Below are positions 19,586 through 43,438 of a DNA stretch of 64,000 bases, in pieces (the first letter of the stretch is position 1; the number at the start of each line of letters is the position of its first letter). The notes under the pieces were generated by a model. It was not told the origin of the DNA. It was given only the letters and a program-made list of their open reading frames with translations, and searched no databases. Source of the stretch: Saccostrea cucullata (lineage: Eukaryota); assembly GCF_032062105.1 (NCBI RefSeq), contig NW_026929709.1, forward strand, positions 62,001-126,000, read 5' to 3'. A program made the position numbers and the translations under genes.

Positions 19586-19613
19586 ACCTTGAAAGATGAT
19601 AAACTAGGTGAAA

Positions 19614-21075: not shown

Positions 21076-21354
21076 GAAGAGACGAGACAAGCAAGAAGAC
21101 AGCTTTTAAAGACTTTCATAACTTAATATTCATCATTATTGCTTATGTATCATTTGTAAAAAGATGATCAAGATTCTGAAGGGAACATTCACAAATGACG
21201 TTTAAACAATGTAGATATATTGCTTGTGAGTAAAATATGTAAAGAAGTATAATTATGCATACAGATGTAATAAACATGTTTATTCAAACGTTTATGAATC
21301 TTCATTGTTATTTAATCATATGACTCAACTAGGATATATATATCTCAAAAAGTC

Positions 21355-21894
21355 ATGGCTAATTTATTTGCAGGAATAATGAGGTTGACAAACGTCGTGT
21401 ACCAAGGAGACATGAATTGTTTTATCAATCTTCAACAACTAACATACCGTTTAGTTAACGTGCGGTATGATCCTCTCAAATTTCCAGGGGTTATTTTTCA
21501 ACATAGAAAAATAGGAGGGAACTGTTTAATATTTTCCAATGGAAAGATAAATTGCAACGGAGCATGCGATAGTTTTAATACTGGACTAAAACGACTGAGA
21601 AGGTATGCTCGCTACATTCAACGAATTGGATATGACGTCGTACTTACTAACGTACATATTGTCACCGCCTCCGCGTTTCACAAACTATCTAATCGTTTAG
21701 ATGTAAATTCAATTTCTCCAGCCTTAAAATTTTCTTATGATCCTGAATTATTTCCTGCTGTAATGTTGCGACGAAATGATATTCATTTTACATGTCACTT
21801 AAGTGGGAGCGTGTTAATTACTGGCATAAAACGAGTCAAGGATCTAGATGAGATTGTGTACCCAACTATAGTAGAAATAGAAACCTCATTATAA
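21355..21894 (+). CDS. TATA-binding-protein-like protein (core domain only, 179 aa)
   Basis: Two TBP repeats: NVV...YDPLKFPGVI...LIFSNGKINCNGA and YDPELFPAVML...SGSVLITG. Confidence 0.9.
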   Translation: MANLFAGIMRLTNVVYQGDMNCFINLQQLTYRLVNVRYDPLKFPGVIFQHRKIGGNCLIFSNGKINCNGACDSFNTGLKRLRRYARYIQRIGYDVVLTNVHIVTASAFHKLSNRLDVNSISPALKFSYDPELFPAVMLRRNDIHFTCHLSGSVLITGIKRVKDLDEIVYPTIVEIETSL

Positions 21895-21945
21895 GAAGAA
21901 GAAAAGTTTTATTTAGTTCTAATTATTTATACCATAATCATAACG

Positions 21946-23058: not shown

Positions 23059-23086
23059 ATTATACTATAATTAAAACTGTTCAAAA

Positions 23087-23431
23087 ATGGAGCAATCTCG
23101 CGTGATGCAAAACGCCGATTTTTTAAGAGAACTCGGGCATGCGAATTACATTCGACAACGTGTCATAATACAGAGAGCTAATCAACGACAGATTTCCGCT
23201 CTCAGTGATGTTGTACGACATCTGCTTGATAGAACAATACCCATACTATCACACGACCGCAGCTTTTTCCGTCAACACAACTTAGTCATGAGGACTCTGT
23301 CAAGTTCTAGAGTTTCGGTGTCCCGTAAGAAAAGAACATTACTGACGCATCATACCCTGATTCCCAGTCTTCTAAGAGACTACTACTTAGCTAGAATACT
23401 TATTTTATCCATCAGGAACAGCGAGTCCTAA
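23087..23431 (+). CDS. Small basic helical Polinton protein, paralog of 26605-26928
   Basis: The pattern FL..L......R..I....QI..L......L...I.......F..H......L......S.KK..L aligns with the 26605-26928 protein. Confidence 0.7.
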   Translation: MEQSRVMQNADFLRELGHANYIRQRVIIQRANQRQISALSDVVRHLLDRTIPILSHDRSFFRQHNLVMRTLSSSRVSVSRKKRTLLTHHTLIPSLLRDYYLARILILSIRNSES

Positions 23432-23480
23432 GGTTATAAGAAGTTGGTTAACCTAAAGGAGAAAACACGAAAAAGAAGCA

Positions 23481-23906
23481 ATGGCCGTATATCTTTTCAT
23501 AGACAGCAGAGACTCTACCGTTTTCCATCCTTCCAACACTTCTGATGACTTTCTTGTGACGCTGCCCAAAGCTTACTTGATAGATGACTCGTGGGAATGT
23601 GCCATTTTAGAATTAAACATTGATATACACGATGATGTTAGTACAGCTAAATTGTATGTATGTTGTGACATCATAGGCGATAGTTACGTCAAAAATACGA
23701 TGTTACCAATTTTGAGAGCCATCACGTTAAAAAGAGGAATTAATCAGATAACCTACACAAATCCCTTTTACATGACAGTTTCTAAACAGGAAATCAGTCA
23801 AATAAGAATATTTATAAGAAACAAAGACTTGAGTGTTCTTCATTCTCAAGTTAATTTTTTCAATTGTACTCTGTGTTTGCGTAAAAAGAAATTATGGGAT
23901 CAGTAG
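23481..23906 (+). CDS. Minor capsid protein (penton), compact single jelly-roll
   Basis: S..S...HPSN...DF...LP......WE.A..E, LYV.CDII..S.V.....PILR and PFY..V....I..I.I.I motifs. Confidence 0.85.
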   Translation: MAVYLFIDSRDSTVFHPSNTSDDFLVTLPKAYLIDDSWECAILELNIDIHDDVSTAKLYVCCDIIGDSYVKNTMLPILRAITLKRGINQITYTNPFYMTVSKQEISQIRIFIRNKDLSVLHSQVNFFNCTLCLRKKKLWDQ

Positions 23907-24271
23907 AAGTATACGACTACAAGAAAATGCAATGGGTACCATACATTCCGAACTTCGATAAATGGGTTCGCCATTTTGAAGATATTTCTGCTGGAAGAGT
24001 TCGACCGGACTACAAGGGGCGTTACATTGTAGGAAGTGGTTCTCATAACCGAACAGTACCTCCCAGTCAAGAACATAAACCCACCGTAAAGCTTGTGACA
24101 CCAGTAGCACAGGCCATCGAAATGGCCAGATCAGAATTAGAGCGCGAACAAGACAACTCTCCGAATGAGGATAAATCTATAAGAAGGAAACGATTCTTAG
24201 CCCCGCCTGGCAAACGCGACAATAAACCTAGGACCAAGAAACCTAAATTCGATACACAATTCGACGATTAG
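23894..24271 (+). CDS. Uncharacterised Polinton protein, possible virion core protein
   Basis: 125-aa ORF packed between penton and MCP. Basic C-terminus; VGSG resembles an adenain cleavage site. Confidence 0.7.
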   Translation: MGSVEVYDYKKMQWVPYIPNFDKWVRHFEDISAGRVRPDYKGRYIVGSGSHNRTVPPSQEHKPTVKLVTPVAQAIEMARSELEREQDNSPNEDKSIRRKRFLAPPGKRDNKPRTKKPKFDTQFDD

Positions 24272-24273
24272 TC

Positions 24274-25521
24274 ATGGATGAAAATCATTTAAATCAACTC
24301 TCCCTTTTTGAATCACCTCCCGTCGATACGACCATTCAAACGAGAGAATGGGTGGAATTTAGACCTATCAATCAAATATCAGAGTACTCTGCTTTGGAAT
24401 TTAACATACCACCACTCTCTACGGGTTACATGGATCTTAGAAATAGTCGGTTAAAAGTCAAATTGAGAATACTGAATTCCTTGAACAATCCTATCACGAA
24501 AGAAGATGCTGTGGGTTTGGTGAATCTACCTTTACACACCATATTTGCTCAGGTAGACACCAGTCTACAGCAAACCCCTGTATCTCAGTTGGGCACAAAC
24601 TATCCTTACAAGGCCTACATCGATACTCTGTTGACTACCTCCGCTGACAACTACGGAGTGCGATACTCTCAACTTTTTATTAAGGACTCCAACAATCCCG
24701 ACGATGCCGATCCTATCAAGGGCCTGAATTCAGGATTGTACCTACGTTATGTATTTACTCAAGAAGGCAAAATACTAGATTTGGAAGGCCCCCTGCAGAT
24801 TGACCTCTTCCAGCAGGAACGTTTAATTTTAAACGGAGTATCACTTTCGCTAAAATTGTGGCCCAGTAAAGATGCCTTTAAACTGATGTCAGTGTCTGGT
24901 TTAGATTACAAAGTTCAGATTGTCGATGCGAGTTTTAAGCTATGTATCCAGAGACCGAATCCTGCCCTGACCATGGCCCATGTCAAAATGCTAGAAAAGT
25001 CTCCTGCAATATATCCTTACGTATTTTCTAATCTGAAAATAGCTTCCATCGCTAAAGGAGAATTCGGTTTTACCATGGACGACGTATTTCAGGGAGAAAT
25101 TCCCTCCACCCTCATTCTGGGACTGGTTTCTAGCAGTGCCTTTAGTGGAAGTTATAAGAAGTCACCCTTTAACTTTCAACATTTTGATTGTAATTTTGTA
25201 GCTTTCTACGTGGACGGACAGTCTTTTCCCGCCAAACCTTTACAACCCAACTATAATGCCGATACTTACTTGGAAGCTTACCAAACCTTAGTTTCGGGTA
25301 GAGAAAACGTTTATGTTGAACGTGAAGAATACCCAAAAGGCAATGCCCTTTACGTATTGGACATCAATCCCTACATAGATTTTAACACAAGAAGAAAAGG
25401 GCATTGTCGCCTAGAACTCAAATTCGCATTTCCATTACCAGAGAGCGTAACATTAATTTTATATGGAAAGTTTCCACAAGTTCTCCACATCGACCAATCT
25501 CGAAGCATCATATTCAAATGA
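24274..25521 (+). CDS. Major capsid protein (double jelly-roll)
   Basis: LSLFESPPVDTTI, LEFNIP, YPYKAYIDTLL, LILNGV and SPFNFQHFD motifs; 415 aa. Confidence 0.93.
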   Translation: MDENHLNQLSLFESPPVDTTIQTREWVEFRPINQISEYSALEFNIPPLSTGYMDLRNSRLKVKLRILNSLNNPITKEDAVGLVNLPLHTIFAQVDTSLQQTPVSQLGTNYPYKAYIDTLLTTSADNYGVRYSQLFIKDSNNPDDADPIKGLNSGLYLRYVFTQEGKILDLEGPLQIDLFQQERLILNGVSLSLKLWPSKDAFKLMSVSGLDYKVQIVDASFKLCIQRPNPALTMAHVKMLEKSPAIYPYVFSNLKIASIAKGEFGFTMDDVFQGEIPSTLILGLVSSSAFSGSYKKSPFNFQHFDCNFVAFYVDGQSFPAKPLQPNYNADTYLEAYQTLVSGRENVYVEREEYPKGNALYVLDINPYIDFNTRRKGHCRLELKFAFPLPESVTLILYGKFPQVLHIDQSRSIIFK

Positions 25522-25886
25522 ATAACTTTGAATTGAAATCTTATTTGTCGAGATATGACAGTTGCGGAGGAAGAGGAAAGCATTGGGTCGCTATCCATTT
25601 TCCTTTAAGAGGCCCAGCAGATTTTTTTGATTCTCTAGGAAACTCTCCGGAATTTTACAACACCAGATTCAGATACATTTTGACAATTAATGGCCCTAAA
25701 TATCAATACTCCAATTCTAGAATCCAATCAGAAACGTCTAGTGTGTGTGGACATTATTGTATTTATTTCATTGCTAAAAGAAATGTGGGATTTTCTATGA
25801 AAAATATTATGCATGATTTTAGTGTATCACATTTGCATGAAAACGACCGTTTGGTCTCTGACTATGTAAAACAATTACATCAATAA
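25518..25886 (+). CDS. Adenain-like cysteine protease, apparently internally shortened
   Basis: The ATG overlaps the MCP stop (ATGA). Catalytic motifs GKHWVA, FFDSLG and RIQ...SSVCGHYC. Confidence 0.85.
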   Translation: MNNFELKSYLSRYDSCGGRGKHWVAIHFPLRGPADFFDSLGNSPEFYNTRFRYILTINGPKYQYSNSRIQSETSSVCGHYCIYFIAKRNVGFSMKNIMHDFSVSHLHENDRLVSDYVKQLHQ

Positions 25887-26257
25887 AATTATACGAACAA
25901 TTTTCCTTTTACGTTGATTTTTTAATTTGAAAATAATACTAGGTATTTAATATGTTAATAAAAATGAAACATGAATAGAATTATTTTGTGTCTTAATTGC
26001 TGCTAACAGAAACCTTCAAGTTGAGTTCATACTAAGTAACTATTTCGGGAAAAAAACACAGAGTTGACTAAAAATTATTAGTAATTATCATTTAATGAAA
26101 TTCACATACGAAATTGGGTTATTTCTTTAGAATAATCTTCTACAATAGAGTGTTACTTGTAAATCCAGACGAATAAATAACAAAAGAATGAAAAATTATA
26201 TATAATTCTTTATTAGTATGCAGCATTGGTGATTAATAATAGAACAGTGAATATGGT

Positions 26258-26617
26258 TTAAAATTGAATCCAAGTTTTATTAAGTCTGTATCGAGAATAA
26301 GGTTTCTTTGCGGATTTCAAAATCTTTTTTGCGATTTTTAAAGTCTTTTGGAGTGCTGGCTGTATTTTCATTAAAGGCTCAGGAGATGTACGCAAAAAAT
26401 CCTCTATAGTTTCAGAATCCACCAAATTCTCAGTCTGTGAGCTTTGGTTGTTTGTCTCCTGTTGTAACTCATCAGGTTTAGTCATATCTTCAGGTTTGTT
26501 TTTGGGTGTTTCTGTAGAATTTTGTTTAAAAACTTCCTGATGCGACTCTTGGAGAGACAACAGACGTTGGTATTTGTCGTATGGTACCAAAACAGATTTT
26601 TGCATTACGTCCACCAT
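26258..26617 (-). CDS. Uncharacterised Polinton protein
   Basis: 119-aa ORF in the convergent gene block; N-terminal KSVLVPYDKYQRL. Confidence 0.65.
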   Translation of the reverse strand: MVDVMQKSVLVPYDKYQRLLSLQESHQEVFKQNSTETPKNKPEDMTKPDELQQETNNQSSQTENLVDSETIEDFLRTSPEPLMKIQPALQKTLKIAKKILKSAKKPYSRYRLNKTWIQF

Positions 26618-26928
26618 CTTCTTAGGAAAGGTTTTACAATTTTTAGAAAAACGGGAACGATCCGATGTTTTCTTTTTAAGAGAAGTAACTTGCTTTTTCG
26701 CGACGCCGTCTTATCCCCCAAAACTAGAAGAAATAATTTGTGCTTTTTAAGTATATTTTTCTCACTTTGGTTAAGTACAATAACACTATGTATGACGTTC
26801 GCAGCTATTTCTCCCAACACTTGTAATTGTGGTTTCGTCACAGAACTCAGTAACAACTTTCTTTGTGCGGGGGATGTTTGTAGTAAAAGTTCTAAAAAGG
26901 ATTTCTGGTCTCTAACCAAGGAACTCAT
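26605..26928 (-). CDS. Small basic helical Polinton protein, paralog of 23087-23431
   Basis: QKSFLELLLQTSPAQRKLLL...QLQVLGEIAANVI...LKKHK pattern; sits next to the ATPase. Confidence 0.75.
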   Translation of the reverse strand: MSSLVRDQKSFLELLLQTSPAQRKLLLSSVTKPQLQVLGEIAANVIHSVIVLNQSEKNILKKHKLFLLVLGDKTASRKSKLLLLKRKHRIVPVFLKIVKPFLRRWWT

Positions 26929-26955
26929 TTTAAAGATAAACTTGAAAGGGCATTC

Positions 26956-27603
26956 TTATAAACTGGTGTAAACTACGGGTTCTTCCTCCGGAAATATGTT
27001 GGTTCGGAGTCTATATTTGTCGTTGCCTTGTGGTGACGTATCAACTACGAGGTACCCAAAAGCTTGTTTAGTTGCATCAGTGTATGCTTCTATTAATACT
27101 TTAGAGCGTCCTGGGTATAGTTGTCGGCCTAGCATAGATATCTGCGAGGCGTTTCTCATGTTTTTCATGAGTACTAAATAATAGGTATTTAAGGCTAGGG
27201 TTCGAGATTTAGAGCCTCTTGGAAAAATATTTTGGGTTATGAAAATGACGCTGAGACGTCGGTGATGACAGCCCTGTGTAAACAAAAGTTCCATGTCTAC
27301 ATCCTGTACGACTCTATGCATTAAATCATCTAACACTATTAATGTATGCTGGCGATCGGAAGTCAAATCTTGAATTGTTTCATTAGAAGGTATCCCGTGA
27401 TGTAATTTCAAGTTAGAAATATGTTGCTCTATTTCGTCAAATAAAGGCTGATGAATTCCGCAACAATATAAAATTCTTTTGGGAGGTTCCTTAACATACA
27501 TTTCATCTAATTGAGTCAGTAACCGATATACAAATCTTGTTTTTCCGCTTCCTGTTTGCCCGCTAATACACATGCTCGAACAAGGTTGAAAAGGAATACT
27601 CAT
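26956..27603 (-). CDS. A32/FtsK-like genome packaging ATPase
   Basis: Walker A GQTGSGKT, Walker B LIVLDD, HHRRLSVIFITQN, and RLRTNIF. Confidence 0.95.
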   Translation of the reverse strand: MSIPFQPCSSMCISGQTGSGKTRFVYRLLTQLDEMYVKEPPKRILYCCGIHQPLFDEIEQHISNLKLHHGIPSNETIQDLTSDRQHTLIVLDDLMHRVVQDVDMELLFTQGCHHRRLSVIFITQNIFPRGSKSRTLALNTYYLVLMKNMRNASQISMLGRQLYPGRSKVLIEAYTDATKQAFGYLVVDTSPQGNDKYRLRTNIFPEEEPVVYTSL

Positions 27604-27644
27604 CTTGATTATTCTTCTAATCCCTCTGCGATAGAGCAGGGTTC

Positions 27645-27875
27645 TTATATCTTATCAGCCTTTAAAGACGGGTTGGGTAAGACATAACCTATGGCACTAC
27701 TCAGCAAAGATATCCATAATTCAGAGGAGCCGTTTTTTAATGACAGATTAACTATAGAAGTGATTATGATGATATATACCACTGTCATTTGACAGAAATA
27801 TACTATTTCCGATTTCGGGAGTTTACTCCCTAGAAACCTCCAAGATTCTGTTGAAGTGCTATTAGGTCTTTCCAT
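27645..27875 (-). CDS. Small two-helix membrane protein
   Basis: 76 aa with two hydrophobic segments and GYVLPNP. Has an upstream TATAAGAA like its neighbours. Confidence 0.7.
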   Translation of the reverse strand: MERPNSTSTESWRFLGSKLPKSEIVYFCQMTVVYIIIITSIVNLSLKNGSSELWISLLSSAIGYVLPNPSLKADKI

Positions 27876-28352
27876 AATTAAAAAAAAACAACACCATTAC
27901 ATTAATGCTTCTTATAAACTCTTACTGAATAATATAAAAGATGACTTATAAACTACAAAAACACGACAATACAAAATCTGTTTGTCAACATTTATTTTTA
28001 TATGATTATGTATATGTAAATAACAACTATAGGATGTAACATATGTTCTCATAAATCTATATACAATATGTACAATGTATTTGGTCTATGCCTGACTCAC
28101 GCCTGATGAAAGAAGGGCACAATTTTATAAACAATATTGAGAGCAACTTTTAATTATATACAACAAGTAACGCTATATACTTTTAATAATAGAATGATAT
28201 ATCTATGAGTAATTTGAAAAAAAAAATTAAAAAAAAAATTAACAAAATAATAAACAACAATAAAACCTATTAATGAAGTCCTCCCTATACCATTGCCTAA
28301 AACTTCAAATTTATTCACTCATGTTTGATAGTTAATTGTATATCGACTTCTA

Positions 28353-31300
28353 TTATTCGACTTCTTCTAGAAGATGAATAAGATTTAAATCGAAGTCGTC
28401 AATTTCGATATCATCGATCTTTTTAGGTTTTAAGGGACACAGTTCTATATCTAATGGTTTTGTAATCACACCGTCAGCTAGTACTTTTCTTTTACAGTAA
28501 AAGTAGGAAAAACCATTCCTCACTTGACGATAAGTGCAGATTTTGTTATTGTGAAGTTTAAAACCCATATTTATCCCAAAAGCTTGTTTTTGAGTCTTTA
28601 AAACATTTCTAAAAGTGGTTAGGGGTGCTTTTACTCTTTTCTTGGAAACACCTTTGCATGAAAATTTACAATGGGTGATATCTCTTTGTTTGATATTTTT
28701 CCGCCTGTTCACTGATTTACATTTCTTAGCTCGTTTAAGTAAGCGCCCAGCCGTTATCACGGCGCTTGAAAGCGACACTTGCTTTCGAGCTGAAACGATA
28801 TAAGTCTTGGAACAAAGACCAATGATCTCGTCCCCTTCATATTCAATTTTAAAGAGACCAGGCGTTCTACGATCGTACTTTGCGTGTTCCTTACAGAAAG
28901 TGCGAGGAAACCAATGTCGGTCGCAGTCCGCCTCGATCTCTAGGGTGCTTGTACAATATCCGTTGAGACCGTGATCGTAAAGCTGTCGTAGTTCAGGTTT
29001 AATCACGGACTCAAAGGTGGAACCCGATATCGCCATGTAGGCAGAGTCGGTGTCCATCTCGCAGTATTCAAAGTCTGCACGGTCTACAAATCTATCCATG
29101 AAATCATAGTAGAATTGCAACATGTGCAGTTTTGCATACTGCAAGATGAAGTAACCGATCTGAATGGGCAAGTTCAAATTCAATTTCTTTTTACTTCTTT
29201 CTATTTCATACAATTCCTCGTCTTCTATCAAAGTTGTTAATTTTTTAAAGTGAGGCTCATTTATTTCCATCATGGCATTCCCTTCTCCTCTAACATATTT
29301 GACGACCTGAAATTTTTCTTGATCCATGATGGTGGATCCAAAAGCACTATTACCTTCTAATTTTCGCGTGTCTGCGATAATTGCTTTAGAAGGATCTACG
29401 TCACCTTCACGCCTAGCATTACTGACATCGCTTACGAATGATCGAAAACATCGTTGTGGCGTGAATTCCACGGTTTGATAAATTTTTGTGATTTCCAGAC
29501 CATGACTTATATACCACTTCAGTAATGGAGTAGCAATTAATAATTGGCGTGCGCGCATTCCCCCGACTAGTAATCGCCTAGGTTTTGTAGAAAGGTGAAA
29601 GCGCTTTACATGATTTTGCATGTGATGACCTATCACGTCAAAGGGAATGTCGGTGGTACAAAAGAGGGGACTCATTTCTGAAAAAAACTCATAAGGGGTC
29701 ATAGTGGGGTGGCTGAAGTGAGCAGGCCAGGTATCCGGTACGCGAATGTCGCACTCGACCATGCCAAACAACTTATTACTCATCACGGCAACTATTACGT
29801 CTTCCGAAGACAAAGAACCTTGACTCATATTAGGTTTACGCGAATTTGAGAATTTTTTCAATTTCAAATTAGACCGAACGTTATTTCGGAAAGTGCATTC
29901 GCGCATTTCTACTACTTTATAACCTTTCCTTTGAAGATAAAGTGTTGTTTTGCGAGTTTTCTTTTCGCGACCATTCATCAGCTTGTCGTCTTGAACATGA
30001 CGCGTTAACCAACAACGGTGGCCGTGCCAGTAGCAGCCTTGAAACTGAAACACAGTGTTGGAAGCTTCATCATAACCGTCGACCGGAAAGCGACCTATTT
30101 TCTTTTCCTTTCCGGAATTCAATTTGTGTGTAATCTTGTACTGACCACTGTGGTTCAGCCACTCTAACCAATCATAAGCTAGAGAGTATCGATCGCGTTT
30201 CTGTGGTTTAAATCCGTCGTCTACCTTACGGCGCACAAAAGAACCCACGGGCATTTCTTTCCCTATACAGTGTAGATACAGGGCATTAGCATCGAAGCCA
30301 ATAATCTTACCACAAGGTTTCTGGGAATTCCCTCGAATATAAGTTTTTCCAACCTCGTGATGGCGATTAAATATGATACTCGGTCCGCCAATAATGTTTT
30401 GCTTAATGGTATCATACAAGTCTTCGTTGGCTTGATCGATCAATGCAAAACTGGCCCCCTCTTTTCTCCCACTGTCAAACAACATTCGGCGCGCTAGACC
30501 GGGAACCGAAATACTACATTTGAAAATATCAATTTGACGTTCGAAATAGTACTTCTGTAGATTTGTCACAGCCTGCACGAAAGGTTTGACGTCGAGGTTG
30601 TTATACCACACCAGAAAATCGCGAAATGATGTCATATTTTTTTCCTCCCACACTTTTTGACAAAAGGCGTATTCTTCGTTTGTAATATTTGAATCTTTCA
30701 AAGACGAATAAAAAGCTTCATGTGGAGGAAGTTCGGGGTGATTTAATTTTTCAACAGAGTCTAGAAATTGGTAGGGAAAAAACCCTTTACATTCTTGTAC
30801 ATCGAAAGCACGCAAGAACCCTGAATAATTGATGCCGGGACTCAGATACTGTGTAATATCTAAAAATTTAAACCTACGAGTACTTATGCAGGCATAAGCA
30901 TTATTTCGCTTGACGGTGAATGTGCCATTTGTCGAACCTAGCTCAAGATGTTTGATGAGATAACTTTTGATCAAATTGATGTCGTATTTGGCGGAATTGA
31001 AACCGATACAAATGATCTGTTCGCAATATTCTTCCATTTCCACCTTCAACTTTTCTATGCTTTTCTTTTCATCTTCAATCATTTTATTGACATCGTCTTC
31101 GTGTTCGAGGTACTCGGCCATGTCCTCGTCTACATTGTCGAAAACAAGGTCACTGAGAGCCTCGAACACGTAGGCAAATTTTTCTTTTGCTAGTTCAGCA
31201 GCCCTATTAGCAATCATTGTCATGCACTGAACCATGTTCTTGACCAGAGTGTTGATATCTGGTTCAATGATACAATGTGGTTTTGTGTACTCATCTACGT

Positions 31301-34244
31301 TAGAACAGATGCTAACAGAGATAGGTACGTGATTTTCTGTGTATTGCTGAGAATCAGAACTTTCTGTATACATTGGAACCAGCATAGACTCAAAGTCATA
31401 CACTAAGAACCACTCGTATATTCTTTCTTTTTCGGGAACGCTTATACCGAATTGATCCAATTTATCAAACACGGTATTTGGAGAATAATGAAACCCTCCC
31501 TGAAATCTTCTCTTTGTTTTTCCCGAACAAACACGCTGATGTCGTTTCATATTTTTGAGATGATTGAAATGACGACGACATGTTTTGCACTGAAATTTTT
31601 TGGCATAAGCATTAAAATTCGAGATGTAAGACAGATGGTGCTCGTAAAGATTTAAATAAATGGTGTCCGAAAATTTACACATGGATTTGTAGATAGACTG
31701 TGCTGATTGACTTTCATTCAATGAGAAGACATTAACATTGATTTTGAAGCATTTTTCAATATAAGCAATTTCGTTCAAAGTGATACCCGGGAATGTTTTA
31801 GGATTTGAATCCACTTCTCTTTGGTGAGCATTTTGAAATGACACCCATTGTTGAAATAAAATAAGTGTACGAGATTCTAAGCCCGAAGGATAGTACCCTT
31901 GATGAACCGCTAAACAGCGGAACGCACACAAATTATCTGTATATATTTGACCTTTCCGGTCCTTTGTCAGCTTGATAATAGATTTTGATTGACTAATGTG
32001 AGGAGGTAACATGACTTCCTCATTTCCCAAAACAAAATTCAAATGGTATATGACAATGCGAACATTGGTTATTAAATAGGGTTTCCATTTTGTGTCGGGT
32101 CGTTGGCGTAATATGTAATTCGTAATATTAAGTCGTTGCATTCGCTGCTGCAGTCGATTTAAGTGATTGCGCTGTGACACGTAAATGGGTCTTTGAAAAA
32201 CTTCATGGTTATGATGGGGTTTAAAATATCTATATTCTCTTGTTTCTGTATTAACTAATATGAGACCAAATTCTAGATTCAATCTGAAAGCTCTATTTTG
32301 TCGATCATAAATTTCGTTGGCTGCTTGCATTATTTCCCCTACAGAAAACTGATTATCTATTGGAAAATTATAAATACTACAAACAGTCCCCTCTTGATGA
32401 CGCCGTAATATAATTGGGGCATTACTTTCATATACTTCTTTCAGGCTTTGATCAACTATTCCACCTTCTTTCCAAGGAGGGGATCCATTTCCCCATGGTC
32501 TGGCTTGTAATCCTCCCTCTCCCACTTGAAAATGTTCATTCATCTGATGAACAAAGAGATTACGACGCGAATCAAATCTGAGATGACAAGTTCTACATGT
32601 GTATCGTTCAATGGGCACCTGAAATACAAGCAAAAAAAAACTTTTATTTTTTTTTATTTTTAGATAAAAAGTTAGAAAATGAAAGAAAACTACTCAATCA
32701 TTATTGAAATAATTTTTGTAATGAAATAAGCACTTTTGATTATCAGTGAATCTTTGAATAGGTCCGATTTCATTTAATTCTTTTGTAATAAAAATAATCA
32801 TTTAAAAATTCTCTGTAAATAATTCATGTTAATAGGTATACCTCATTCTGCATTTCATCATATCTGTTACTAGGTCCCAGAATATCTTGATAATTCTGTT
32901 AAAAATATCAAATGAATGCTCTAAATTTCGATTAACTTCGAATGGAAAAAAATTATCATAAATGATTTCTTCGTGTATAAACATAAAGAATTATTTAAAA
33001 TCGCTTTCTTAAATTACTTAAATAACATGTTTTTATTAATAAATATCTCATGTTGCTTTTCATCAGATCTGTAACTAGCTGCTGGAATATCTTGATTATT
33101 CTGTTTTTTAAAAAACCCAATGAATACTGTAAATTTCGATTGGTTTCGAAAAGATATCATAATTTGTTTTCTTCTTAAAGAAGTATAAAGGATTATTTAA
33201 AATTGTTTTCTCTAATTTCAAATAGAAGGATATTTTAACCTAGTAAATACCTCATGTTGAATTTCATCAGATTTATAACTAGGTCCTGGAATATCTTGAT
33301 ATTTCTGTTAAACAAAAAAAATTACATCAATAGAATTTACTTTGGAAAATAAAAGCGGGTGAGGATATAATTAAAATTTTAGATGTACCTGTTTAAGAAT
33401 ATTGTGTTTACTTCAATTTTTCTCCGATCGTTTGTCTGATTCCATTTACTGGTAAATTGATTATATTTATTCTTAAATATATAAAAGTTATATTAGTAAA
33501 AAAATATTTTACTTTTCTAAATTATTTATTTATAGAACTTAAAGTCACAATTGTCAGATTGTTCTTGACACTTGTCAAAATGTCTGAGTTTCTCTCTCGT
33601 TGTTTTGTCATTATTGCTTCCTTTTTTGAAGTACGGTATTACTAGATTTAAAGTCGATTAAAAGTAATTTTTTCTCTGATTGTAAAAGAAAAAAGAACAA
33701 CAAAATAAAGAGGGTAATATGCCTTTTTCAAATGAATAAAATAATTATCTTGATTTTAATGTCTAAAAGCAAGAAACATAAAATATTCTTTGCAAGTTTA
33801 GAAGTACCACATTTATTAAATATGAAGCTATTATTTGGAGAACCCCGTATTTATTTAGTCAAGACCCAAATGAGTGCAAGATCACACTTACGTGTTTTAA
33901 TTTTCGTAAATAATTCTTACCTTGCATCTGGCTATATGTTGCTGATGAGCCTTTTCACACAAGTATTCTTTTTTGCACCTTTCACATTTCAACAACTTAT
34001 CCCTGTGTTCTTTAAGTATATGGATACGCCGTTGAATGGAAGTTTTGAAACATTTCGCGCAATGGGAACACGTTTTACTCTTCTCACATGTCTTCAAATG
34101 ACGTTCGAAATTGTCTTTCCGATTTATTTCTTTTCCACAAAAATTACATTTCAATTTCACTTTGTTTAAATGTATGTCCAAATGGCGTTTTCTTGCGAAT
34201 TCACTACTAAATTTTTTGTTGCAGTGAGGACAAGGATGCTCCAT
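28353..34244 (-). CDS. polB: Spliced protein-primed family B DNA polymerase with N-terminal C2H2 fingers; exons 34244-33921, optional 54-nt microexons, and 32618-28353
   Basis: Exo motifs YDFES, FNSAKYD, YNNLDV; polymerase motifs DANALY, KLEGNSAFG, MDTDS; Vsr-like insert VDGY...QFQGCYWHGH. The long ORF has no ATG but starts at a polypyrimidine-CAG acceptor (32618). The upstream four-finger ORF ends in a phase-0 AAG|GTAAGA donor. Confidence 0.9.
32842..33304 (-). repeat. Three ~205-bp tandem units, each holding a 54-nt exon-like core
   Basis: Cores at 33304-33251, 33100-33047 and 32895-32842, each preceded by ACAG. Confidence 0.85.
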
Positions 34245-34907
34245 CGCTAAAATTTGTCGATAACATTTGTTTTCCGAATTAGTTCAAACATATTTTAACG
34301 TTCGTTATATATATAACAAAATGAATTCCGTATCACTAGTTTCTCTTCTTATGTGTTTCTGTTCAATTAATAATTTAAATTTCATGTATATATCGTTATT
34401 AACGGAAACTGACGACTAACTGATCCTTGTTTGTGTAATACGTTATAATGCAGTACCGGAATAGCTTTATTTCGGAAAATAACAACGGATATGAGTAAAG
34501 GAAATTTATTTGTAAATACAAATCCTTAAACAAATTTTGAATAATTTTTTTTTAATTTGACTAAATTGTGAATCAAATCAATTTTTTTTCTTTGTCCAGT
34601 TGCATTTGTTTGTATTTATTGCTCTCCAATCATGTTAATAATCTCGGTGGTGGTGGTCGTAGTGTTCTTTCTCCACCGATCTTCCTAGATTATTTGAATT
34701 TTACTTTTATAAATAAATATAATTCGTCAATTTTTGTGTCTCTCATGATGGCAGAATTGAATATTGTTTAGTATTAGTTTATATCTCTCCAATTCCAATT
34801 TCTCCGTATCTCTTTATTTGAATATTTCTTCTCTAAAATTTATTAAATGACTAGTTTTTAAGCAAATAGAGGTTTCACTTAATACATGTTTATCATCTTT
34901 TAAGGCC

Positions 34908-35386
34908 TGGTTATAGACTTGTATCTTGACTCAAAATTAGGCCTCATATAGTTAAAATGTTTCGTTTCATTTGTATGTACAGGACATTCACGAAACCGTT
35001 CTTATCAAACCTACTTTTATGAATCAAAGCAATAAATATACGTCTCATTTCAATAATAGACACAGTTTAGGATCTTAATACACTATTGACATATTGTTAT
35101 GTCTATGAGATGTATGTCTCTCAGACTTCAATAAAACTGAACTGAACTGACATAGTAAGCTTCAACTCGTCATAACATTTAAAGAAATACAATATATTCA
35201 TAGGACTTAACGTTTGTGTATAAGGTAATCATAAGTAAAAAATCATCCGGGTTTGCTTCCCTATAGTTACATATAGTCATTATTAGCATCCGGATTTACT
35301 TTATACTTCCACCTTTAAAGCCCACCTCTCCACCTCAAATCAGTTTGCACCTCAAAGTAGCATAAAAAGTCTCACTCTATACTACT
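34908..35386 (-). repeat. Polinton right TIR
   Basis: Inverted match to 19194-19585, with an extra insertion at 35094-35147. Confidence 0.9.
35094..35147 (+). mobile_element. 54-bp retroposon 3' tail inserted in the right TIR
   Basis: Absent from the left TIR. Flanked by a TGACATA duplication (35087-35093, 35148-35154). Contains a stem-loop, AATAAA and an (ACTGA)n tail. Confidence 0.8.
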
Positions 35387-35564
35387 TTTAGTAATTAAAT
35401 CAAAATGCCCAAGAATGAAAAAAGTATCATTACAACACTTTCATAGTTAACTATATTAAGCCAAATAGTAAAACAAATCAATTAAAAATGTATTTCTGAA
35501 TTTTCATAGCCGATTACTTTTTTGAAAATTATTTACAGGTCTGTATGGAGTGGAGTGGCAAGTC

Positions 35565-38500
35565 ATGAAAATCTTGATCTATTTTATTGGATTTTTGGTA
35601 AGTTATAAGTTTTAACTTAAATTCAAAGTTTTATAACATACATGTACATACTTTTTTGTCTATGTTAAACTTGAATGAATGTTCTTTTTCGTTTAAAATT
35701 TCAGCATTTTGTTGATTCTTTGAGCAAAGAGAAATGCCTTAAACCCAGTTCTACAGTAAAGCATGCACTAATGTGCCCAGAAACCGAAGAAGAATGGAAG
35801 AGATCATCTGTAACAATGAATTGTTCTCAATATGCTCCTAGATGTCCCGGATATGACGAAAAGAAATGGGAATATCATTGTGTCCTCGATACATTTTTAA
35901 CTGAGCTGTTAGAGGTCTGTGCTCCAGCTGTGAACATTATTGGTATGTGTTATATGTTCTTTATTCATTAAAACCTTGCACATGTTGCATAAGCTATTAA
36001 AATGTGTTTGACGAAGCATCGTTTTTAAGTTTATTAAGAAAGAATATTGTTAAATTGCTAATATTTTGAGTTAAGAATTACATGTATCATGAAACAGTAT
36101 TTCATTTTTACAGATGATAAGGGCAATATATTTACATGTACTTTGAATTTGTAAATATATTTTTTTTTACATCTAATTTCAATTATTTCCTTTATTTTGT
36201 CATTTACTTTTAGGGGGAAACTGTGCTGAATTTAATATAAAAGGCGATATAATTCAAGAGAATACAAATGCACCTTGTTCTACAGCTAAGGAGAAATGTC
36301 CTTTTTCATATTCATCAACTGATGCTTACAAATGTATGTTTTTATGCGATGATGTTGTTGTTTATTTATTGCAATGTTGTTAAATTAATGTTAGATAGAT
36401 TTGTAATGAAATGATGTTTATCTTTCAGTTGCAGGATGTTTTTCCTTACCAAAAATTAAGGTGAAACCTCCTATAAGAAATTATCCAACAACATTTGAGC
36501 AATCAACTTCTTTGGATAAACAGTATGTACAACTGATTATTTAACAAATTATTTCAAGTCCAAGAATAATCATTAAACCTAGGGCTGGGTATTGGCCCGA
36601 GATTTCGTATTGCGATATATTGCGATATTTGTAACTGTATTGCGATATGTATTGCAATATTTTAAATGTAATTTAAATGGCATTTTCTTCCTAAATTTAC
36701 TTTTAATTTACATGCAGAATGTACATAACTATGATAAGTAACCAACAATGACAAAAAAATTGTTAATTTCATTAAAGTTATGCTCTCAAATGTTCCCACA
36801 AAGCAACTTCTGTCGTACTGTTTGGCTTAATAACAAACTTTCATAAGTCCATTTTTATATTTAATGATAAAATTACTTAATCTAAGCATATTGCCAATAT
36901 ATCGATATTACAAAATCGTATTGCGATACGATATTTTTTGTCATTGTATTGCAATATATTGAAATATCGATATTATTGCCCAGCCCTAATTAAACCTTTG
37001 AAATACTTCACTTGGTATAATTCATTGTATATGTAATGTATATTCGAAATGTTATATTGTTAAATTGGTATGATATTCTTTATATTTATAAATAGTAAAC
37101 AATGTGTATAAATAAACCCTACCAACAACTTAGTTATTTTAATGTAGATAGCAGGTACATATGTACAAGAATAAGATTGAATACTTACATGTAATGCAAG
37201 GAAGAATTGATAATTGAGTGATATTTGCTCCTCAATGGTTTTCAGGATGAAATGAAAAAAGAAGAGAAATTTTGTATGAAAACGTGTTTGTTTTCCTTGT
37301 AGATCTAATGAGGAAGAAGAAAATACTTCTAGCATTACCAAAGATATCATATTTAGCAGTGCTGTTGCCTTGCTACTTCTAATAATTATAATTGGTATAA
37401 TCTTGTGGAAAACACAAGTTCTGAGGAGTATACCATGTTTAAGTATATCATAAAATTTTACCTTAATAATCATCTGCTGTATTTATAAGTAAGAAATGTA
37501 TTATTTCTTTCCTTGCTGAATTAAACAAAATATGCCGGTATATAGCATTATTAATTTCTGAATTAACATATGTTTTAAACAATTATTCCATAGATAGACA
37601 AATGCAAACTGATACAGATGAAAAAAATCGCAAAGGTATTGTTCTGTAGAAATAGAAGTGCCTTATTTATAAATGTTTTTCATCTTCTGTGACAATTAAA
37701 TATTTGGACAAATACTAATCATGAACATTTTTGTCATGTAAAGATCTCAAAAGGCCAGGACTTTTTTTTTAATTTAATTTTTTTCTTTTTCTTTTTTATG
37801 CATTCAGTATTTATATCATTTTATTATACCTCTGTGTATTTTCTTACCAGGTATTTAAAATGTGATGAATAATCTTTTTTTACTGTGAAATAATTTCTTT
37901 TGCTCATTGTCTATGATGAAATAAATTAATCATCAACAGCATTCAATTTCCCTCGTGTTTTATCCGGATAGTGCGAGACAGGTACTAGTAATTTACTTAG
38001 TAATCTACTGACTTTTGGGACAATAGAAAGTAAAACGTCCCCTCAACAACTTTTCCCGGGGGGCATCCGGTGGAAATAGTTGCCTTTTTGGGGAAGAGTA
38101 AACTTGGTATTATCCCAGTAGTCAGAAAATAAATTTTATACATTGTTAAATAAATGCATGTAAATATGTTATAAATAGATCCTGAGAAAGTGTCATTAAT
38201 GGAGTCGCCAAAGATTCTCACAAGAAATTTTTCAGGATGTTCAAGTAAGAGTTATAAAATGTTTTAAAGATATTTTCTGATAAAGACACTAGAGAAAAAT
38301 GCAAACAGATCGAGAAATACAATGTACAGTTGTATGAAATCAAGAAAACAAACTAAAAATGATGATACAGAAAACAATTTAAGAAAATTTTAATATTTTT
38401 ATTATTCAAGTACAAGTTGTAATTTATCAATTTTTTCTATGATGTTGTGGTATAATATACATGTACACCTAATTAAATTAAAATACTTTTACTGCATGTA

Positions 38501-41500
38501 GTTGATGGGCACTTCTCTGCAACATAAAATAATAGGAAAAGTTTAAAATTAACAATCCATAAAATGTTATGAAAAATATTAATGTAACTTGAATACTGTT
38601 CCTTATCTCCACAGATTTCATTCCATAATTTTACATGTAAATAAAAAACGTAAAATTATTTAAATGTAAATTATTTTTAGGCTTAGATTCTTCCCAGATG
38701 GCGACACCAAAGACAGAGGGCATTCGTCATAAAGACATACAAATTCAACTCGAAGAACGTTAGTCTTAATTATGTACTTTCATAACTTTTTTGGTAGTCT
38801 TTTAATGTGAGCAAAAAATCTTCAAACATTTACATAAGTATTCAAAATGTGAAAGAGTTCCTTAAAGCATGAATCGTTCAAATTTACTATAACTATAAAA
38901 TTATTATTATTCAGCCATACCTGAATACGAAGGAACAAGGAGCCGAGTTTTGTTCATAGCTGCAATAGACATCGGAGCAACCTACTCAGGATATGGGTTT
39001 TCTTCAATATTTAACCCGTTTGACATCGAGAAGAACTTCTCTACTACTAATGATAATGCGCTAACTACAAAGATCCTGACTGCTGTATTACAACGCACTG
39101 AAAATAATGAAGATTTATATGGATATGATGCCAGAAAAACATATGAAGAGGCCTTGCCAGGGGATAGAGAAAAGTTATTGTTCTTCTGCCATTTTCACCA
39201 ATTTTACGAAAAAAAGGTACAAAATATAACCCCCAGTAAAAAGCACACTACTTATAATTATAAATACTCATACATGTGTACATGTATTATTAGTTTTATA
39301 ATTACAGCGTATTAAATACTATTTTAGAATTGCTAAGAAAACTAAATTGGACACTTAAATAAGTATTTTTTAAAGGATCTATCCAATAGGTCTGTTTTCT
39401 ATCAGCAGCAGCTATTTTAGCCTTAGGCTAATTTATGGCCAAAGCTCTTGTGTAACTTTCATAAAAAGAGGATATTTAAATTTTTCAAGTTTTTTATTTT
39501 TTGTTTAATTTAATGTTTTGTTAATATGCGGGGACTTGTGTTTTTTTTTACCCATGTTTAAAGTGTGATTTACATATTAATAGCATTCAGAAAACAAATA
39601 TATTTAAAATAGGAATGGCAATCCACACAGACTTAGCAATGAGTTAACAGCATATTGTTCTCCATCTAATTATTAATCTTTTTAAAATTCACATGATATA
39701 GATATGACTAAAGTAAAACTCGGTTATAATCCTGGGGACCTGTGAATTTAATTCGCAAAATTCGTTATATCGAATTTGTATTACTTTATATAGCGAATTT
39801 GCAATATGCACGTTTTCCTTCAAGTATTACCATCGAATTTGTTACAAAAGCAATTATTACAAAATATACCTTGGATAAATAAGGTTTTATTTTAATGTGA
39901 ATTTTATATACAAACACTAAAGCAATATGAGCTGCATTTTTGAAAAAAATATTTTGCTGTTAAAATGTGTTATCTAGATAAATCTGTATGTAACTTTAAC
40001 CTTTATGATCGATTGGACTAAAACAAAGCAGACAAAAGGCTTATACAATCCAATATATAGTTTTAAATAAGAAATCATTATTGTACAGGACGATAATAAT
40101 ATAATTTTGATTTAATCGAAGCTTATACATGTAAATAGTTATTTCCAATTTTGCAACAAAAATTCCGACATCAAATCTGCAGCTCATGTTGCTTTACTAA
40201 AAATAAAGACAGATAATTTGTCAAATTATAATATCTTTGAAAATTCGTTATAAAAGATGTAAATTTCATTATATTTTAAAATCTCTAGGGGACACAAAAT
40301 CAGTTCGCTGTATTAGTAAATTTGTTATTCTGGGTATCAGAGTTCGTTATAACCGTAAAATTTTACAAAGAATTGATAAGAATTTTGCATACTTTTGAAT
40401 TCTGTATACATATCTCAAGCAAGTTTTATTCATATACAAAACACTAACAATATACTAATTTTATTTTGAATTTTATAACTCTGAAAGAGGATTGATTTAT
40501 CATATTTTTAAAATCAGATGTCCCAAATTTAGTTATCTCTGTCGTCATCACCAGATATATTGAACAATGTGTTTATTTGATCATAGATTCGAATGCATAC
40601 ATGTTTGTAAGTAGCTTTTGGGGTATTCATCTGTCCATCCGCAAATGTCTGTTTTCCGAATAAATTTTGTGTGGTCGTTAACATAATTTTTGCATGATTG
40701 ATGGCTCTGGGCTTTCATATATCAAAATTTTAATGTTTATTCCTTGTGAAATTTCTTTAGATGCTAATATTTATTGCCTGCATGGTCATATCTTAGAAGT
40801 TAGACCTATTGCAATAAAAAAGACTGTAGGTACTGTGAGCACTGAGCTCACTAAATGATACCCCAGCCTTCCATGTGATTATAAACGCCGGTTTTGCTCT
40901 GGGAGACCCCAGATAAGTGTCAGGTCAAAAAGTAAAATCAGACGTGCACAATCACTTTATGTAATAAATAATCTGTGAAAGTATTATTTTTTTCAGTGGT
41001 ATAAGAGAAGTTGAAGATAAGATATGGGTACCCTTTAATATTTTAGAAAGAATATAAAGTATCCATGCTTTGCTATATGAAACCCAAAATATATGATATA
41101 TGTGTCGGATCAAAAAGAAAAATAGGACCGAGGTCAAAATGGCACCATGTAACAAAGAATCTGTGAAGTCTAGTTAAATCTAGTCATTCAGTGGTAGAAT
41201 CGGAGTTGCGGATAAGAAATGGGTACCCCAGTGAGTAACAGACAGATGGACGGACGACATCCCGATCACTATATACCAGTCTGCTTTTCAAGTGGAGTTT
41301 GTAATAAAAATTGCATGTGAAATTAAACTTAAACGAAAGTATTGCATGTGAAATTAAACTTTTACCAAAGTATATTGCATGTAGAAGACATTTCAAATCT
41401 TGAAACTTTAGAAAACTTTTATATTGGTCTATGAACTGTCTAGCTTATAGGGATTAATTCATTACTTGAGTATTTCTTGTAATAAGATCTTTCTTTTGGA

Positions 41501-43438
41501 TACCAACCATTTTTTCTCTTTATAACATCATGAACATATTGACTTTAATTAAATATTGTCTGTCTACTTTTTGGAAAACTTTAATCTTGTTCATAACTTT
41601 TGAATGGTTGGTGATGTAGGGCTTTCATATTTCACATTGTATCCCTTGTGACAAGCCCTTTCTTATGCTTTCAACATTTCTCGCAAATGTCGATGTTTAA
41701 AAGAGTTATATTAAAAGACGTTATGTCAGCCACATTGTTATTGGTTTCATTTGAGAAGGTCCAGTATCGAGAGACACGTAAACTAAATGGATGTTAAACT
41801 TTAAGTATTTTCTTTTGTAAAAAGGGAGACATGGTGGTTAAAGCAGAGAACGGGATAGAGAAACCCCTGAAAGACATATTGACAATATTCATCAGATACC
41901 TTCTAAATCTTATTCTACAACGCATCAAGGAGGTTTTCAACAGAACTCAGGACACAACTGAGGGCGTTCGATTGGAAGACGTTAACGCTGTTGTCACTTA
42001 CCCTGTATCCTGGGACGAAGACCTTGTTTCTGTACTGCGGAGTGCAGCACACGCTGTAGGAAATGTCATTGATTATAAGTACCATATTGCAAAAATTCCA
42101 ATAGTCAGCTGATGTAAAAATAAATGTACTAGTTTACTAATATAGTTTTGTTTAGATTATGTCAAATAATAAGAAATGTTCTGGTAATTTGGTCATTTTG
42201 GCCCAACGCATTGTACAGTGCGCCTTGCATATACCAGATTTATTCTTCGTCAGAAGTAACCAAATTTACTATATAATTTTATTTTCACCTCCGATAGGCT
42301 GGAATTTCTGAGCGATCGCTCTACATGGTAAGTGAAGTGCAGACCGTTTTACCCTTTCTTCAAGTCATGCCAAAACATTTGCTGCCTTTAGCTAAACGAG
42401 AGACCGGACGTAAAGTATTTCAGGACATCTACAACAAAGACTTCATCATTTTGGATGTAGGCGGGGGTATGAATTGTTATTCATGAAAGCGTGTTATTGC
42501 TGCATTTCACCTGCTTAATTTGTTACTCATTATGCTAAGTAATTTATTTTCATTCAGAATTTTTTCAGTTGAATTCTATTCGATTGATTTTAAATTTGTT
42601 TTTGAATTTGTAAAACAAAATGAATCCAAGAAGAAATAATTAAAGAATACAATCATGTCTTTGTTTTCAAGCGATAAAGTGTAAAATTTTGAAAAAAGGC
42701 ACATGAACAATAATGGTGAAATATAAATGTCTTTTTTATTACTTTATTTTCATAGAGAGATGTGAGATAACAAAACTGAGAGGGAGAGAAGGACAAGAAC
42801 GGTCCCAGAACATAGAAATGAGATACTTTGACTGGGAAGCAGACGGTCCGGGGGAGAGATTTATTCGGTTCATGAAATCTTTGTTTGGGGAATATATCAT
42901 ATCAGACCTCCATACAAATTATGTGGAAGATTACTCTTTGCTTTTGCATAACTTCGAGACAGAAAAGCACAAAATCAGCAGCAATACACAGAAAATTTAC
43001 TTACCGATCCCGACCCAGTTGGAGGATCTTGTAAAAGAACATACTAGTCAGTGTTCTGTTAAGGAGCACGTGGAATCAAAATCAAGACAGAAATACAGTA
43101 GGGGAGTTACCTTTGAAAACCACAAACTTCACATTGATGCAGAAGTTTTTCGTGTCGTTATTTTTAAACCAGCTCTAATGTTATTAAGCCAGCATTTAAA
43201 GGAATTTTTCGAAAAAGATAAAAATTTAAGTGAGATTTCTTTTCTCTGTATGGTTGGAGGTTATTCAAACAACAAATTATTCCAAAATGAAGTCAAACGT
43301 TTTTGTGATTTAAACAATTTAGCTGTTGTAGTACCAGATGAAGCAGAACTTGTCATTTTAAAAGGTGCTATATATGCTGGACATTTACACTGGTTCAGAT
43401 GTCAGTTTGAAGAAAAATTGAAAAGCCTTACCTATTAG
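35565..43438 (+). CDS. Single-pass receptor-like protein with a Cys-rich ectodomain and a cytoplasmic HSPA12-like Hsp70 NBD (11 coding exons, 709 aa)
   Basis: Exons 35565-35597, 35705-35942, 36214-36333, 36429-36522, 37303-37442, 37594-37635, 38681-38758, 38915-39216, 41825-42055, 42298-42466, 42756-43438. All GT-AG and phase-compatible, total 2130 nt. Motifs AAIDIGATYSGY, VVTYPVSW, ILDVGG, MVGGYS, ILKGAIYAG. Confidence 0.8.
36580..36988. mobile_element. hAT-type MITE in an intron
   Basis: TAGGGCTGGG...CCCAGCCCTA termini, 8-bp TSD ATTAAACC (36572-36579, 36989-36996), subterminal ATTGCGAT repeats. Confidence 0.9.
39709..40360. mobile_element. Degenerate Tc1/mariner-type MITE relic
   Basis: TA-AAGTAAAACTCGGTTATAA start and recurring TTCGTTATA subterminal motifs. 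Right terminus not resolved. Confidence 0.35.
40818..41305 (+). mobile_element. HINE/Helentron-like non-autonomous element relic
   Basis: Palindromic GTGAGCACTGAGCTCAC head and a GACA/GGAC microsatellite near the 3' end. Confidence 0.4.

What the first reader, a model, noticed from the sequence alone, without database searches (positions are those of the whole stretch)
35565..43438. Receptor-like Hsp70: Cys-rich ectodomain and TM helix fused to a degenerate HSPA12 nucleotide-binding domain
Seen: 11 phase-compatible exons give one 709-aa ORF. It runs signal peptide (MKILIYFIGFLHFVDS), Cys-rich domain (CPETEEEW..C..YHC..EVCAP..GNCAEFN..CPFSYSS), TM (IIFSSAVALLLLIIIIGIILW), linker, then an Hsp70-12-like NBD that stops just after ILKGAIYAG with no substrate-binding domain. 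ATPase motifs are altered: DIGAT for DFGTT, SEVQT for LEPEAA, and DVGGERCE for DxGGGTVD. Known: HSPA12 is greatly expanded in bivalves and is normally soluble. Inference: a signalling receptor that uses a pseudo-ATPase Hsp70 fold as its intracellular module or decoy.
Basis: partly seen in the sequence, partly recalled or inferred. Interest (0 to 1): 0.85.

Follow-up and report, generated by a model that had tools for sequence, protein, structure and literature searches.

The report
Oyster receptor with dead Hsp70 domain
A rock-oyster gene family joins a cell-surface domain with no solved-structure match, through one membrane helix, to the ATP-binding half of an Hsp70 chaperone that has lost its ATP-splitting residues, most likely making immune-type receptors whose inner part is a docking platform rather than a chaperone.

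Summary
Real, with one correction. The 11 exons give 709 aa, but RNA contigs add a 66-nt exon (38179-38244), so 12 exons and 731 aa. Overlapping RNA contigs chain the ectodomain, TM and Hsp70 exons; no single contig spans them all. The genome is Saccostrea cucullata. About 17 loci share the build (10-Cys ectodomain, TM, HSPA12-type nucleotide-binding domain, no substrate-binding domain); six have full-length RefSeq models. The ectodomain models confidently (pLDDT 91), matches no solved structure, is mollusc-only in my searches, and elsewhere carries DED, STAND-ankyrin or OTU-like tails. This copy keeps the Mg2+ and adenosine contacts but has lost all three gamma-phosphate residues (T13, K71, T204 equivalents); paralogs are more decayed. 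Best reading (0.5): an immune-type receptor with a pseudo-ATPase scaffold; no function tested. Prior art: Kaur 2021 lists Cys-rich+TM+TRADD-N+HSP70 proteins in Crassostrea virginica, so this is a new variant (direct fusion, truncated, inactivated), not a new kind. The scan noted similar Cys-rich ectodomains on STAND and Roc-COR tails, and a TRIM-Hsp70-NBD fusion, on other DNA of this genome; not this fusion. A Polinton ends 179 nt upstream of the ATG.

The parts
35565..35597 (+). Exon 1: ATG and hydrophobic core of a short signal-peptide-like segment (RefSeq extends it 5' to 35539 and adds a 19-nt coding exon 35405-35423)
   Evidence: sequence; P0001 N-terminus
35705..35942 (+). Exon 2: end of signal segment and first six Cys of the 10-Cys ectodomain
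   Evidence: (at least 150 paralogous exons)
36214..36333 (+). Exon 3: ectodomain Cys 7-9
36429..36522 (+). Exon 4: last Cys and stalk (the acceptor at 36435 would give a stop; RefSeq reads on into intron 4 and ends at 183 aa)
37303..37442 (+). Exon 5: stalk end and transmembrane helix (aa 177-197, starts at 37346)
   Evidence: hydropathy; RNA contigs
37594..37635 (+). Exon 6: cytosolic linker
   Evidence: joint 37441>37594 in run X4
38179..38244 (+).
   Evidence: X2 joint 38227>38681; X2 and X4 depth at 38210; frame check
38681..38758 (+). Exon 7: linker; holds an in-frame ATG that could start a soluble NBD-only form (not shown)
38915..39216 (+). Exon 8: NBD phosphate-1 loop (D10 kept, T13>A) and K71 site (K>H)
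   Evidence: joints
41825..42055 (+). Exon 9: NBD lobe I, TYPVSW for TVPAIW; AAG acceptor used in RNA
42298..42466 (+). Exon 10: connect-1 (E175 kept) and first half of phosphate-2 (D199, GG kept)
42756..43438 (+). Last exon: rest of phosphate-2 (G203>E, T204>R, D206>E), lobe II with E268, K271 and the adenosine GG kept, stop just after the NBD
19194..35386 (.). Neighbour, not part of the gene: Polinton/Maverick element with terminal inverted repeats and a 6-bp target duplication (TTTAGT), ending 179 nt before the ATG at 35565

Best explanation
A single spliced gene for a type I membrane receptor of an oyster-expanded, mix-and-match family. Outside: a disulphide-knit 10-Cys domain (ligand unknown). 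Inside: an ~85-aa linker and an HSPA12-derived nucleotide-binding domain that has lost its substrate-binding domain and its gamma-phosphate residues. Shown: gene structure, splicing in close relatives, family, motif changes, ectodomain model. Inferred: surface location; ligand-driven clustering; the Hsp70 fold serving as a non-hydrolysing docking platform (a pseudo-ATPase, as pseudokinase domains serve some receptors) that recruits downstream immune or cell-death partners. This copy may still hold Mg-ADP/ATP as a structural cofactor; most paralogs probably bind none. One ancient fusion followed by duplication and stepwise decay fits the tree.
For: RNA joints chain exon 4 to exon 10. Six full-length RefSeq paralogs of 636-691 aa have the same build. 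About 17 loci pair an ectodomain exon with a truncated last exon 7-33 kb downstream on the same strand, whereas none of the more than 100 full-length HSPA12 last exons has a listed ectodomain hit upstream (read off by eye). Fused NBDs fall on one side of a 100/99 branch against eight ordinary HSPA12 and share derived motifs (PF after connect-1, CE after phosphate-2). Paralog NBDs are only 18-45% identical yet keep open frames and the Hsp70 fold. T13, K71 and T204 equivalents are lost here; PMC12406271 names DnaK T11 and K70 as the gamma-phosphate sensors and T199 as needed for normal ATPase rates. The same ectodomain carries DED, nSTAND3-ankyrin and OTU-like tails, typical immune signalling modules.
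Against: No function, ligand, partner or location was tested. Expression is low in contigs and absent from 1.9 Gb of oligo-dT reads of run X21. RefSeq models this locus as a 183-aa ectodomain-only protein. The K71 and other Hsc70 numbers rest on motif analogy through an oyster HSPA12, not on a structural alignment. The tree has only eight ordinary HSPA12 rows and long branches. No direct fusion was found outside S. cucullata, with weak search power.
Confidence: 0.5

Rival explanations
1. Integrated decoy or bait: the Hsp70 fold mimics host Hsp70 to catch pathogen effectors or host co-chaperones (J-proteins, nucleotide-exchange factors), and the receptor signals or sequesters when the bait is bound or modified.
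For: The host fold is kept while catalysis is lost; fast divergence among paralogs; interchangeable tails on one ectodomain; an unchecked scan note of a TRIM fused to an Hsp70 NBD alone.
Against: A bait should resemble its target, but these NBDs are only 15-27% identical to ordinary HSPA12; no effector-output domain follows the NBD; no partner data.
Confidence: 0.2
2. Exon-shuffling by-product: a fusion that duplicated by drift and is decaying; the NBD has no current role and the gene works, if at all, as a bare ectodomain+TM protein.
For: Some copies are broken or split (C7333, C23404 second copy, C13754); low expression; catalytic motifs decay differently in each copy; many family members have only short tails; a Polinton sits at this copy's 5' end.
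Against: Open 430-450-aa NBDs kept across copies at about 20% identity, with structural Gly/Pro/Trp invariant; precise splicing kept in alleles 3-5% divergent.
Confidence: 0.13
3. [quoted passage not shown]
For: PMC6345817 links HSPA12 to type I receptor tails; the window copy keeps nucleotide contacts.
Against: That binding was mapped with the substrate-binding domain, which is exactly what the fusion lacks; paralogs have lost the nucleotide contacts.
Confidence: 0.1
4. Two separate genes (a secreted or membrane ectodomain gene and a soluble truncated HSPA12), or mainly separate isoforms from one locus.
For: RefSeq's 183-aa model; one run has a contig that starts in the intron before exon 7, and NBD exons are 1.5-2 times deeper than the TM exon.
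Against: Exon 5 has no stop and is joined to exon 6 in RNA; 6b>7>8>9>10 are joined; the paralogs are annotated as single fused proteins.
Confidence: 0.07

Closest known systems
Crassostrea virginica Cys-rich+TM+alpha-rich+TRADD-N+HSP70 proteins (XP_022302694.1, XP_022302701.1; Kaur et al. 2021, PMC8195603, Fig. 4 source data)
   Same: Oyster, Cys-rich ectodomain, one TM, HSP70 domain at the C-terminus; read by the authors as receptor-like immune proteins. A protein of the related DED-bearing class (P0157) has an ectodomain homologous to this one.
   Different: Those are 904-998 aa with an alpha-rich region and a TRADD-N domain between TM and HSP70; here an ~85-aa low-structure linker leads straight to the NBD. 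The paper says nothing of truncation or inactivation. I did not obtain those sequences, so common origin of the HSP70 part is untested.
HSPA12 (Hsp70-12) family, expanded in bivalves (89 HSPa12 genes in Magallana gigas, PMC11268181)
   Same: NBD sequence (35% to the nearest last exon; 31% in exon 8) and the same four-exon NBD layout with an intron inside phosphate-2.
   Different: Membrane-anchored; no substrate-binding domain; T13, K71, G203, T204, D206 equivalents changed. That survey listed no transmembrane member.
Atypical and pseudo-ATPase actin/Hsp70-fold proteins: Ssz1, Hsp110/Sse1, Arp7/Arp9 (own knowledge)
   Same: Fold kept, hydrolysis weak or lost, use as scaffold or cofactor. Ssz1-type chains were the only Hsp70s touched, weakly, by the paralog profile (E 0.4-1.1).
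   Different: Those are soluble and work with chaperone or chromatin complexes; no relationship beyond the fold is shown.
Oyster 10-Cys-ectodomain receptors with nSTAND3(+ankyrin), DED, OTU-like or short tails
   Same: Same ectodomain and TM.
   Different: Different cytosolic module.

Membership tests
HSPA12 / Hsp70 chaperone | Actin/Hsp70-type NBD homologous to HSPA12 | tested here: met
   Exon-wise similarity to ordinary HSPA12 of this genome; the comparator hits PF00012 weakly; paralog NBD gives HSP70 in the Atlas (0.94) and DnaK/Hsp70 as all top Foldseek rows (E about 0.002, low-confidence model)
HSPA12 / Hsp70 chaperone | C-terminal substrate-binding domain | tested here: not met
   16 aa after the aligned end versus 147-159 aa
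HSPA12 / Hsp70 chaperone | Gamma-phosphate and catalytic residues T13, K71, T204 (Hsc70 numbers) | tested here: not met
   A, H, R in this copy; roles from PMC12406271; numbering by motif analogy
HSPA12 / Hsp70 chaperone | Mg2+ and adenosine contacts D10, E175, D199, E268, K271, adenosine GG | tested here: met
   All kept in this copy, mostly lost in paralogs
HSPA12 / Hsp70 chaperone | ATP binding and hydrolysis, client refolding | not testable with these tools
   needs purified protein
Oyster Cys-rich+TM+TRADD-N receptors (Kaur 2021) | Cys-rich ectodomain plus one TM | tested here: met
   homology to the ectodomain of a DED-bearing member, P0157
Oyster Cys-rich+TM+TRADD-N receptors (Kaur 2021) | DED or alpha-rich region plus TRADD-N between TM and variable tail | tested here: not met
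   only 85 aa between TM and NBD, no room for both domains; paralogs likewise
Type I membrane protein | Cleaved signal peptide and single TM with N-out topology | tested here: inconclusive
   hydropathy and layout fit (61 of 71 homologs have a TM-like stretch); no predictor available; start codon uncertain
TNF-receptor or other known Cys-rich receptor ectodomains | Sequence or fold match to a described domain | tested here: not met
   No Pfam family, no PDB sequence hit, Foldseek best E 2.8, VIA best Z 2.8 with a pLDDT 91 model; a missing match does not prove a new fold

The most novel reading that the evidence does not exclude
Oysters have turned the Hsp70 ATPase domain into a receptor signalling module in its own right: a surface sensor of undescribed fold coupled directly to a pseudo-ATPase that acts as a nucleotide-holding switch or as a bait for effectors and co-chaperones, with a paralog series from 'binds but cannot hydrolyse' (this copy) to 'empty fold'.
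Probability: 0.3. Interest if true: 0.85.

Novelty: new variant of a known kind. Interest (0 to 1): 0.62.

Why it matters
[quoted passage not shown] If they signal, the Hsp70 fold joins kinases and STAND NTPases as an enzyme fold reused as a pseudo-enzyme in receptors. The ectodomain, with hundreds of copies in this genome and no solved relative, is a concrete target for ligand and structure work on how oysters sense pathogens without adaptive immunity.

Tried and rejected
Pfam on single exons: nothing above noise. PDB sequence search with the last exon: only a spurious short match to a binary-toxin-like chain, rejected. Homolog search with the last exon alone: blank, explained by the length filter. 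Look-up of P0001's contig: not on record. AlphaFold of paralog P0059 from five sequences: pLDDT 43, and that isoform skips an exon, so used only as a weak fold hint. Alternative acceptor 36435: gives a stop. Direct 37635>38681 splice: not seen among the printed joints. C15489 holds the nearest truncated NBD and a near ectodomain paralog, but in the wrong order and with no ectodomain in the 15 kb upstream, so not counted as fused. C17384 (closest ectodomain, 60%) shows no NBD downstream. No second DNA copy of this gene in the assembly. One search is circular (P0157 is inside the alignment) and is not used as evidence. Literature searches for a direct TM-Hsp70 receptor found none.
Full report
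Observation. The product has a short hydrophobic N-terminus, ten cysteines in aa 22-134, one strongly hydrophobic helix (aa 177-195, Kyte-Doolittle 19-mer 3.15) and the motifs quoted. The joined translation was used only inside local scripts for frame checks and alignment.

RNA. I laid four runs on 36400-42399. Contigs of three studies show 39216>41825 and 42055>42298 directly, so the weak-looking AAG acceptor is real. Exon 7>8 is joined in all three, and exon 5>6 (TM to linker) in run X4. In X2 one 260-nt contig of depth 5.45 holds exon 5, and the same depth appears on exon 4; its length fits exons 4, 5 and the start of 6 (inference). With it the frame stays open, 731 aa. The exon 6>6b joint is not among the printed rows, but the pieces begin at 38177, where only the last AG agrees with the intron, and their spare lengths fit the end of exon 6 within a few bases. 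The 1672-nt X1 contig is the length expected for exons 7-11 plus about 95 nt of 3' UTR. Limits: no single contig spans TM to NBD; depth is low; the one raw-read run had no exon reads; the RNA alleles are about 3-5% divergent, so they come from other animals or a sister lineage; X1 shows retained introns.

Identity and family. The identical database protein is XP_062620323.1 of Saccostrea cucullata, which RefSeq ends at 183 aa by reading into intron 4 and starts 15 aa earlier. Exon 2 has at least 150 matches in the genome (497 candidates) and the last exon at least 150. Six RefSeq proteins of 636-691 aa, and one partial one, have the whole build: signal segment, ten Cys, TM, linker, HSPA12-like NBD, early stop (P0003, P0116, P0152, P0153, P0158, P0159). 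Reading together by eye, 17 loci (this one included, one evident haplotig left out, two broken or split) have an ectodomain exon 7-33 kb upstream of a truncated last exon on the same strand. None of the more than 100 full-length HSPA12 last exons has a listed ectodomain match upstream. Some loci may be allelic in this 1.17-Gb assembly, and the lists are capped.

The Hsp70 part. Against nine ordinary HSPA12 last exons, which run 147-159 aa past the NBD, this one stops after 16: the substrate-binding domain is gone. The introns fall where they do in ordinary oyster HSPA12. In Hsc70 numbers, mapped by motif analogy through an oyster HSPA12 (my knowledge, not a structural alignment), this copy keeps D10, T14, E175, D199, G201, G202, E268, K271 and the adenosine GG, and changes T13>A, K71>H, G203>E, T204>R, D206>E. 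PMC12406271 states that DnaK T11 and K70 are the side-chain sensors of the gamma-phosphate, that T199A greatly lowers ATPase rates, and that D8, E171 and D194 hold the Mg2+ waters. So this copy looks able to hold Mg-nucleotide but not to split it or sense it allosterically; G203E may even block the site. The paralogs have lost T13, G202, G203 and T204 in every case, and D10, D199 or K271 in most. They are 18-45% identical to one another yet open, and a paralog NBD is read as HSP70 by the Atlas (0.94) and by Foldseek (all top rows Hsp70 NBDs, E about 0.002, poor model). A tree of last exons puts ten fused NBDs and one truncated orphan on one side of a 100/99 branch against eight ordinary ones, with this copy nearest the ordinary side; shared derived motifs agree. 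Sampling is thin and branches are long, so one origin is likely, not shown.

The ectodomain. An 82-sequence alignment keeps all ten Cys at 90% or more. AlphaFold gives a confident small alpha/beta model (pLDDT 91, pTM 0.85) with no Pfam, PDB-sequence, Foldseek or VIA match (best Z 2.8). Atlas structure matches are mollusc-only and include clusters with nSTAND3 and ankyrin. Named homologs are from Saccostrea, C. virginica and M. gigas. Most homologs have a TM, and their tails vary: short, DED (P0157), OTU-like (P0160, weak), CIDE-N-like (P0161, weak).

How it most likely works. Shown: a spliced gene and its family. Inferred: a surface receptor whose ectodomain binds an unknown ligand and clusters, bringing together catalytically dead Hsp70 folds that recruit partners (0.5). 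Rivals: bait for effectors or co-chaperones (0.2), decaying shuffle product (0.13), built-in trafficking adaptor like HSPA12A on SorLA, which however used the missing substrate-binding domain (0.1; PMC6345817), and separate genes (0.07). The immune reading rests on the company the ectodomain keeps, not on any experiment.

What is known. Kaur et al. 2021 (PMC8195603) described a C. virginica expansion of Cys-rich+TM receptors with DED and TRADD-N and a variable tail that includes HSP70; the source data list two loci of 904-998 aa. An earlier scan note led me to that paper. So a receptor-like oyster protein ending in HSP70 is on record. Not on record in what I could search: the direct fusion without TRADD-N, loss of the substrate-binding domain, the graded inactivation, the size of the family, and the lack of a structural match for the ectodomain. 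It works like a pseudo-enzyme receptor; it is HSPA12-derived but fails membership as a chaperone, and fails the TRADD-N test of the Kaur family.

Context. I only describe that element.

Verdict: real; new variant of a known kind; interest 0.62.

Noticed in passing
window 19194-35386: Polinton/Maverick element (integrase, A32-type ATPase, polB-like ORF, capsid-like and protease-like ORFs, TBP, PC4) with terminal inverted repeats and a 6-bp TTTAGT target duplication, inserted at the 5' end of the receptor gene.
   Followed up: partly
window 38561-38758: Run X1 has a contig that begins in the intron 120 nt before exon 7 and runs through the NBD; exon 7 has an in-frame ATG, so a soluble NBD-only isoform is possible (or this is unspliced RNA).
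   Followed up: no
window 36523-36545: RefSeq ends the protein a few codons into intron 4; exon 4 is three times deeper than exon 5 in run X4, so a secreted ectodomain-only isoform is possible.
   Followed up: no
window 38915-38926: In run X4 the exon 7>8 joint shows 10 letters where the window has 12; either a display ambiguity or a frameshifted allele.
   Followed up: no
G000:C6796:188963-192942: Three tandem near-identical copies of the truncated last NBD exon behind one ectodomain exon: possible alternative last exons or an assembly repeat.
   Followed up: no
L016 (G000:C15489:14964-16509): A truncated, heavily degenerate HSPA12 NBD, the nearest NBD-only relative of this gene, with no ectodomain found in the 15 kb upstream.
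   Followed up: partly
G000, rows with open frames of 215-266 aa (e.g. C6792, C20505, C4429, C11830, C2084): Further HSPA12 last exons that stop after the NBD but have no listed ectodomain nearby; may be the TRIM-Hsp70-NBD family of an earlier scan note.
   Followed up: no
P0160, P0161, P0157 (L045-L048): Same ectodomain with an OTU-like tail, a CIDE-N/ubiquitin-like plus Cys-rich tail, and a DED-containing 785-aa tail.
   Followed up: partly
window 36580-36990, 39600-40400, 40828-41700: High-copy intronic repeats (MITE-like), heavily covered by unrelated transcripts.
   Followed up: no
window 310-2394, 48680-53558, 55285-60035: Two LINE-type reverse-transcriptase elements and a Gypsy-type LTR element (gag, protease, pol ORFs), judged from the translations only.
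   Followed up: no
window 5681-6550 (+), 15419-16033 (-): A rhodopsin-family GPCR exon (PF00001), and a small single-TM ORF with several tail tyrosines and no Pfam match.
   Followed up: no
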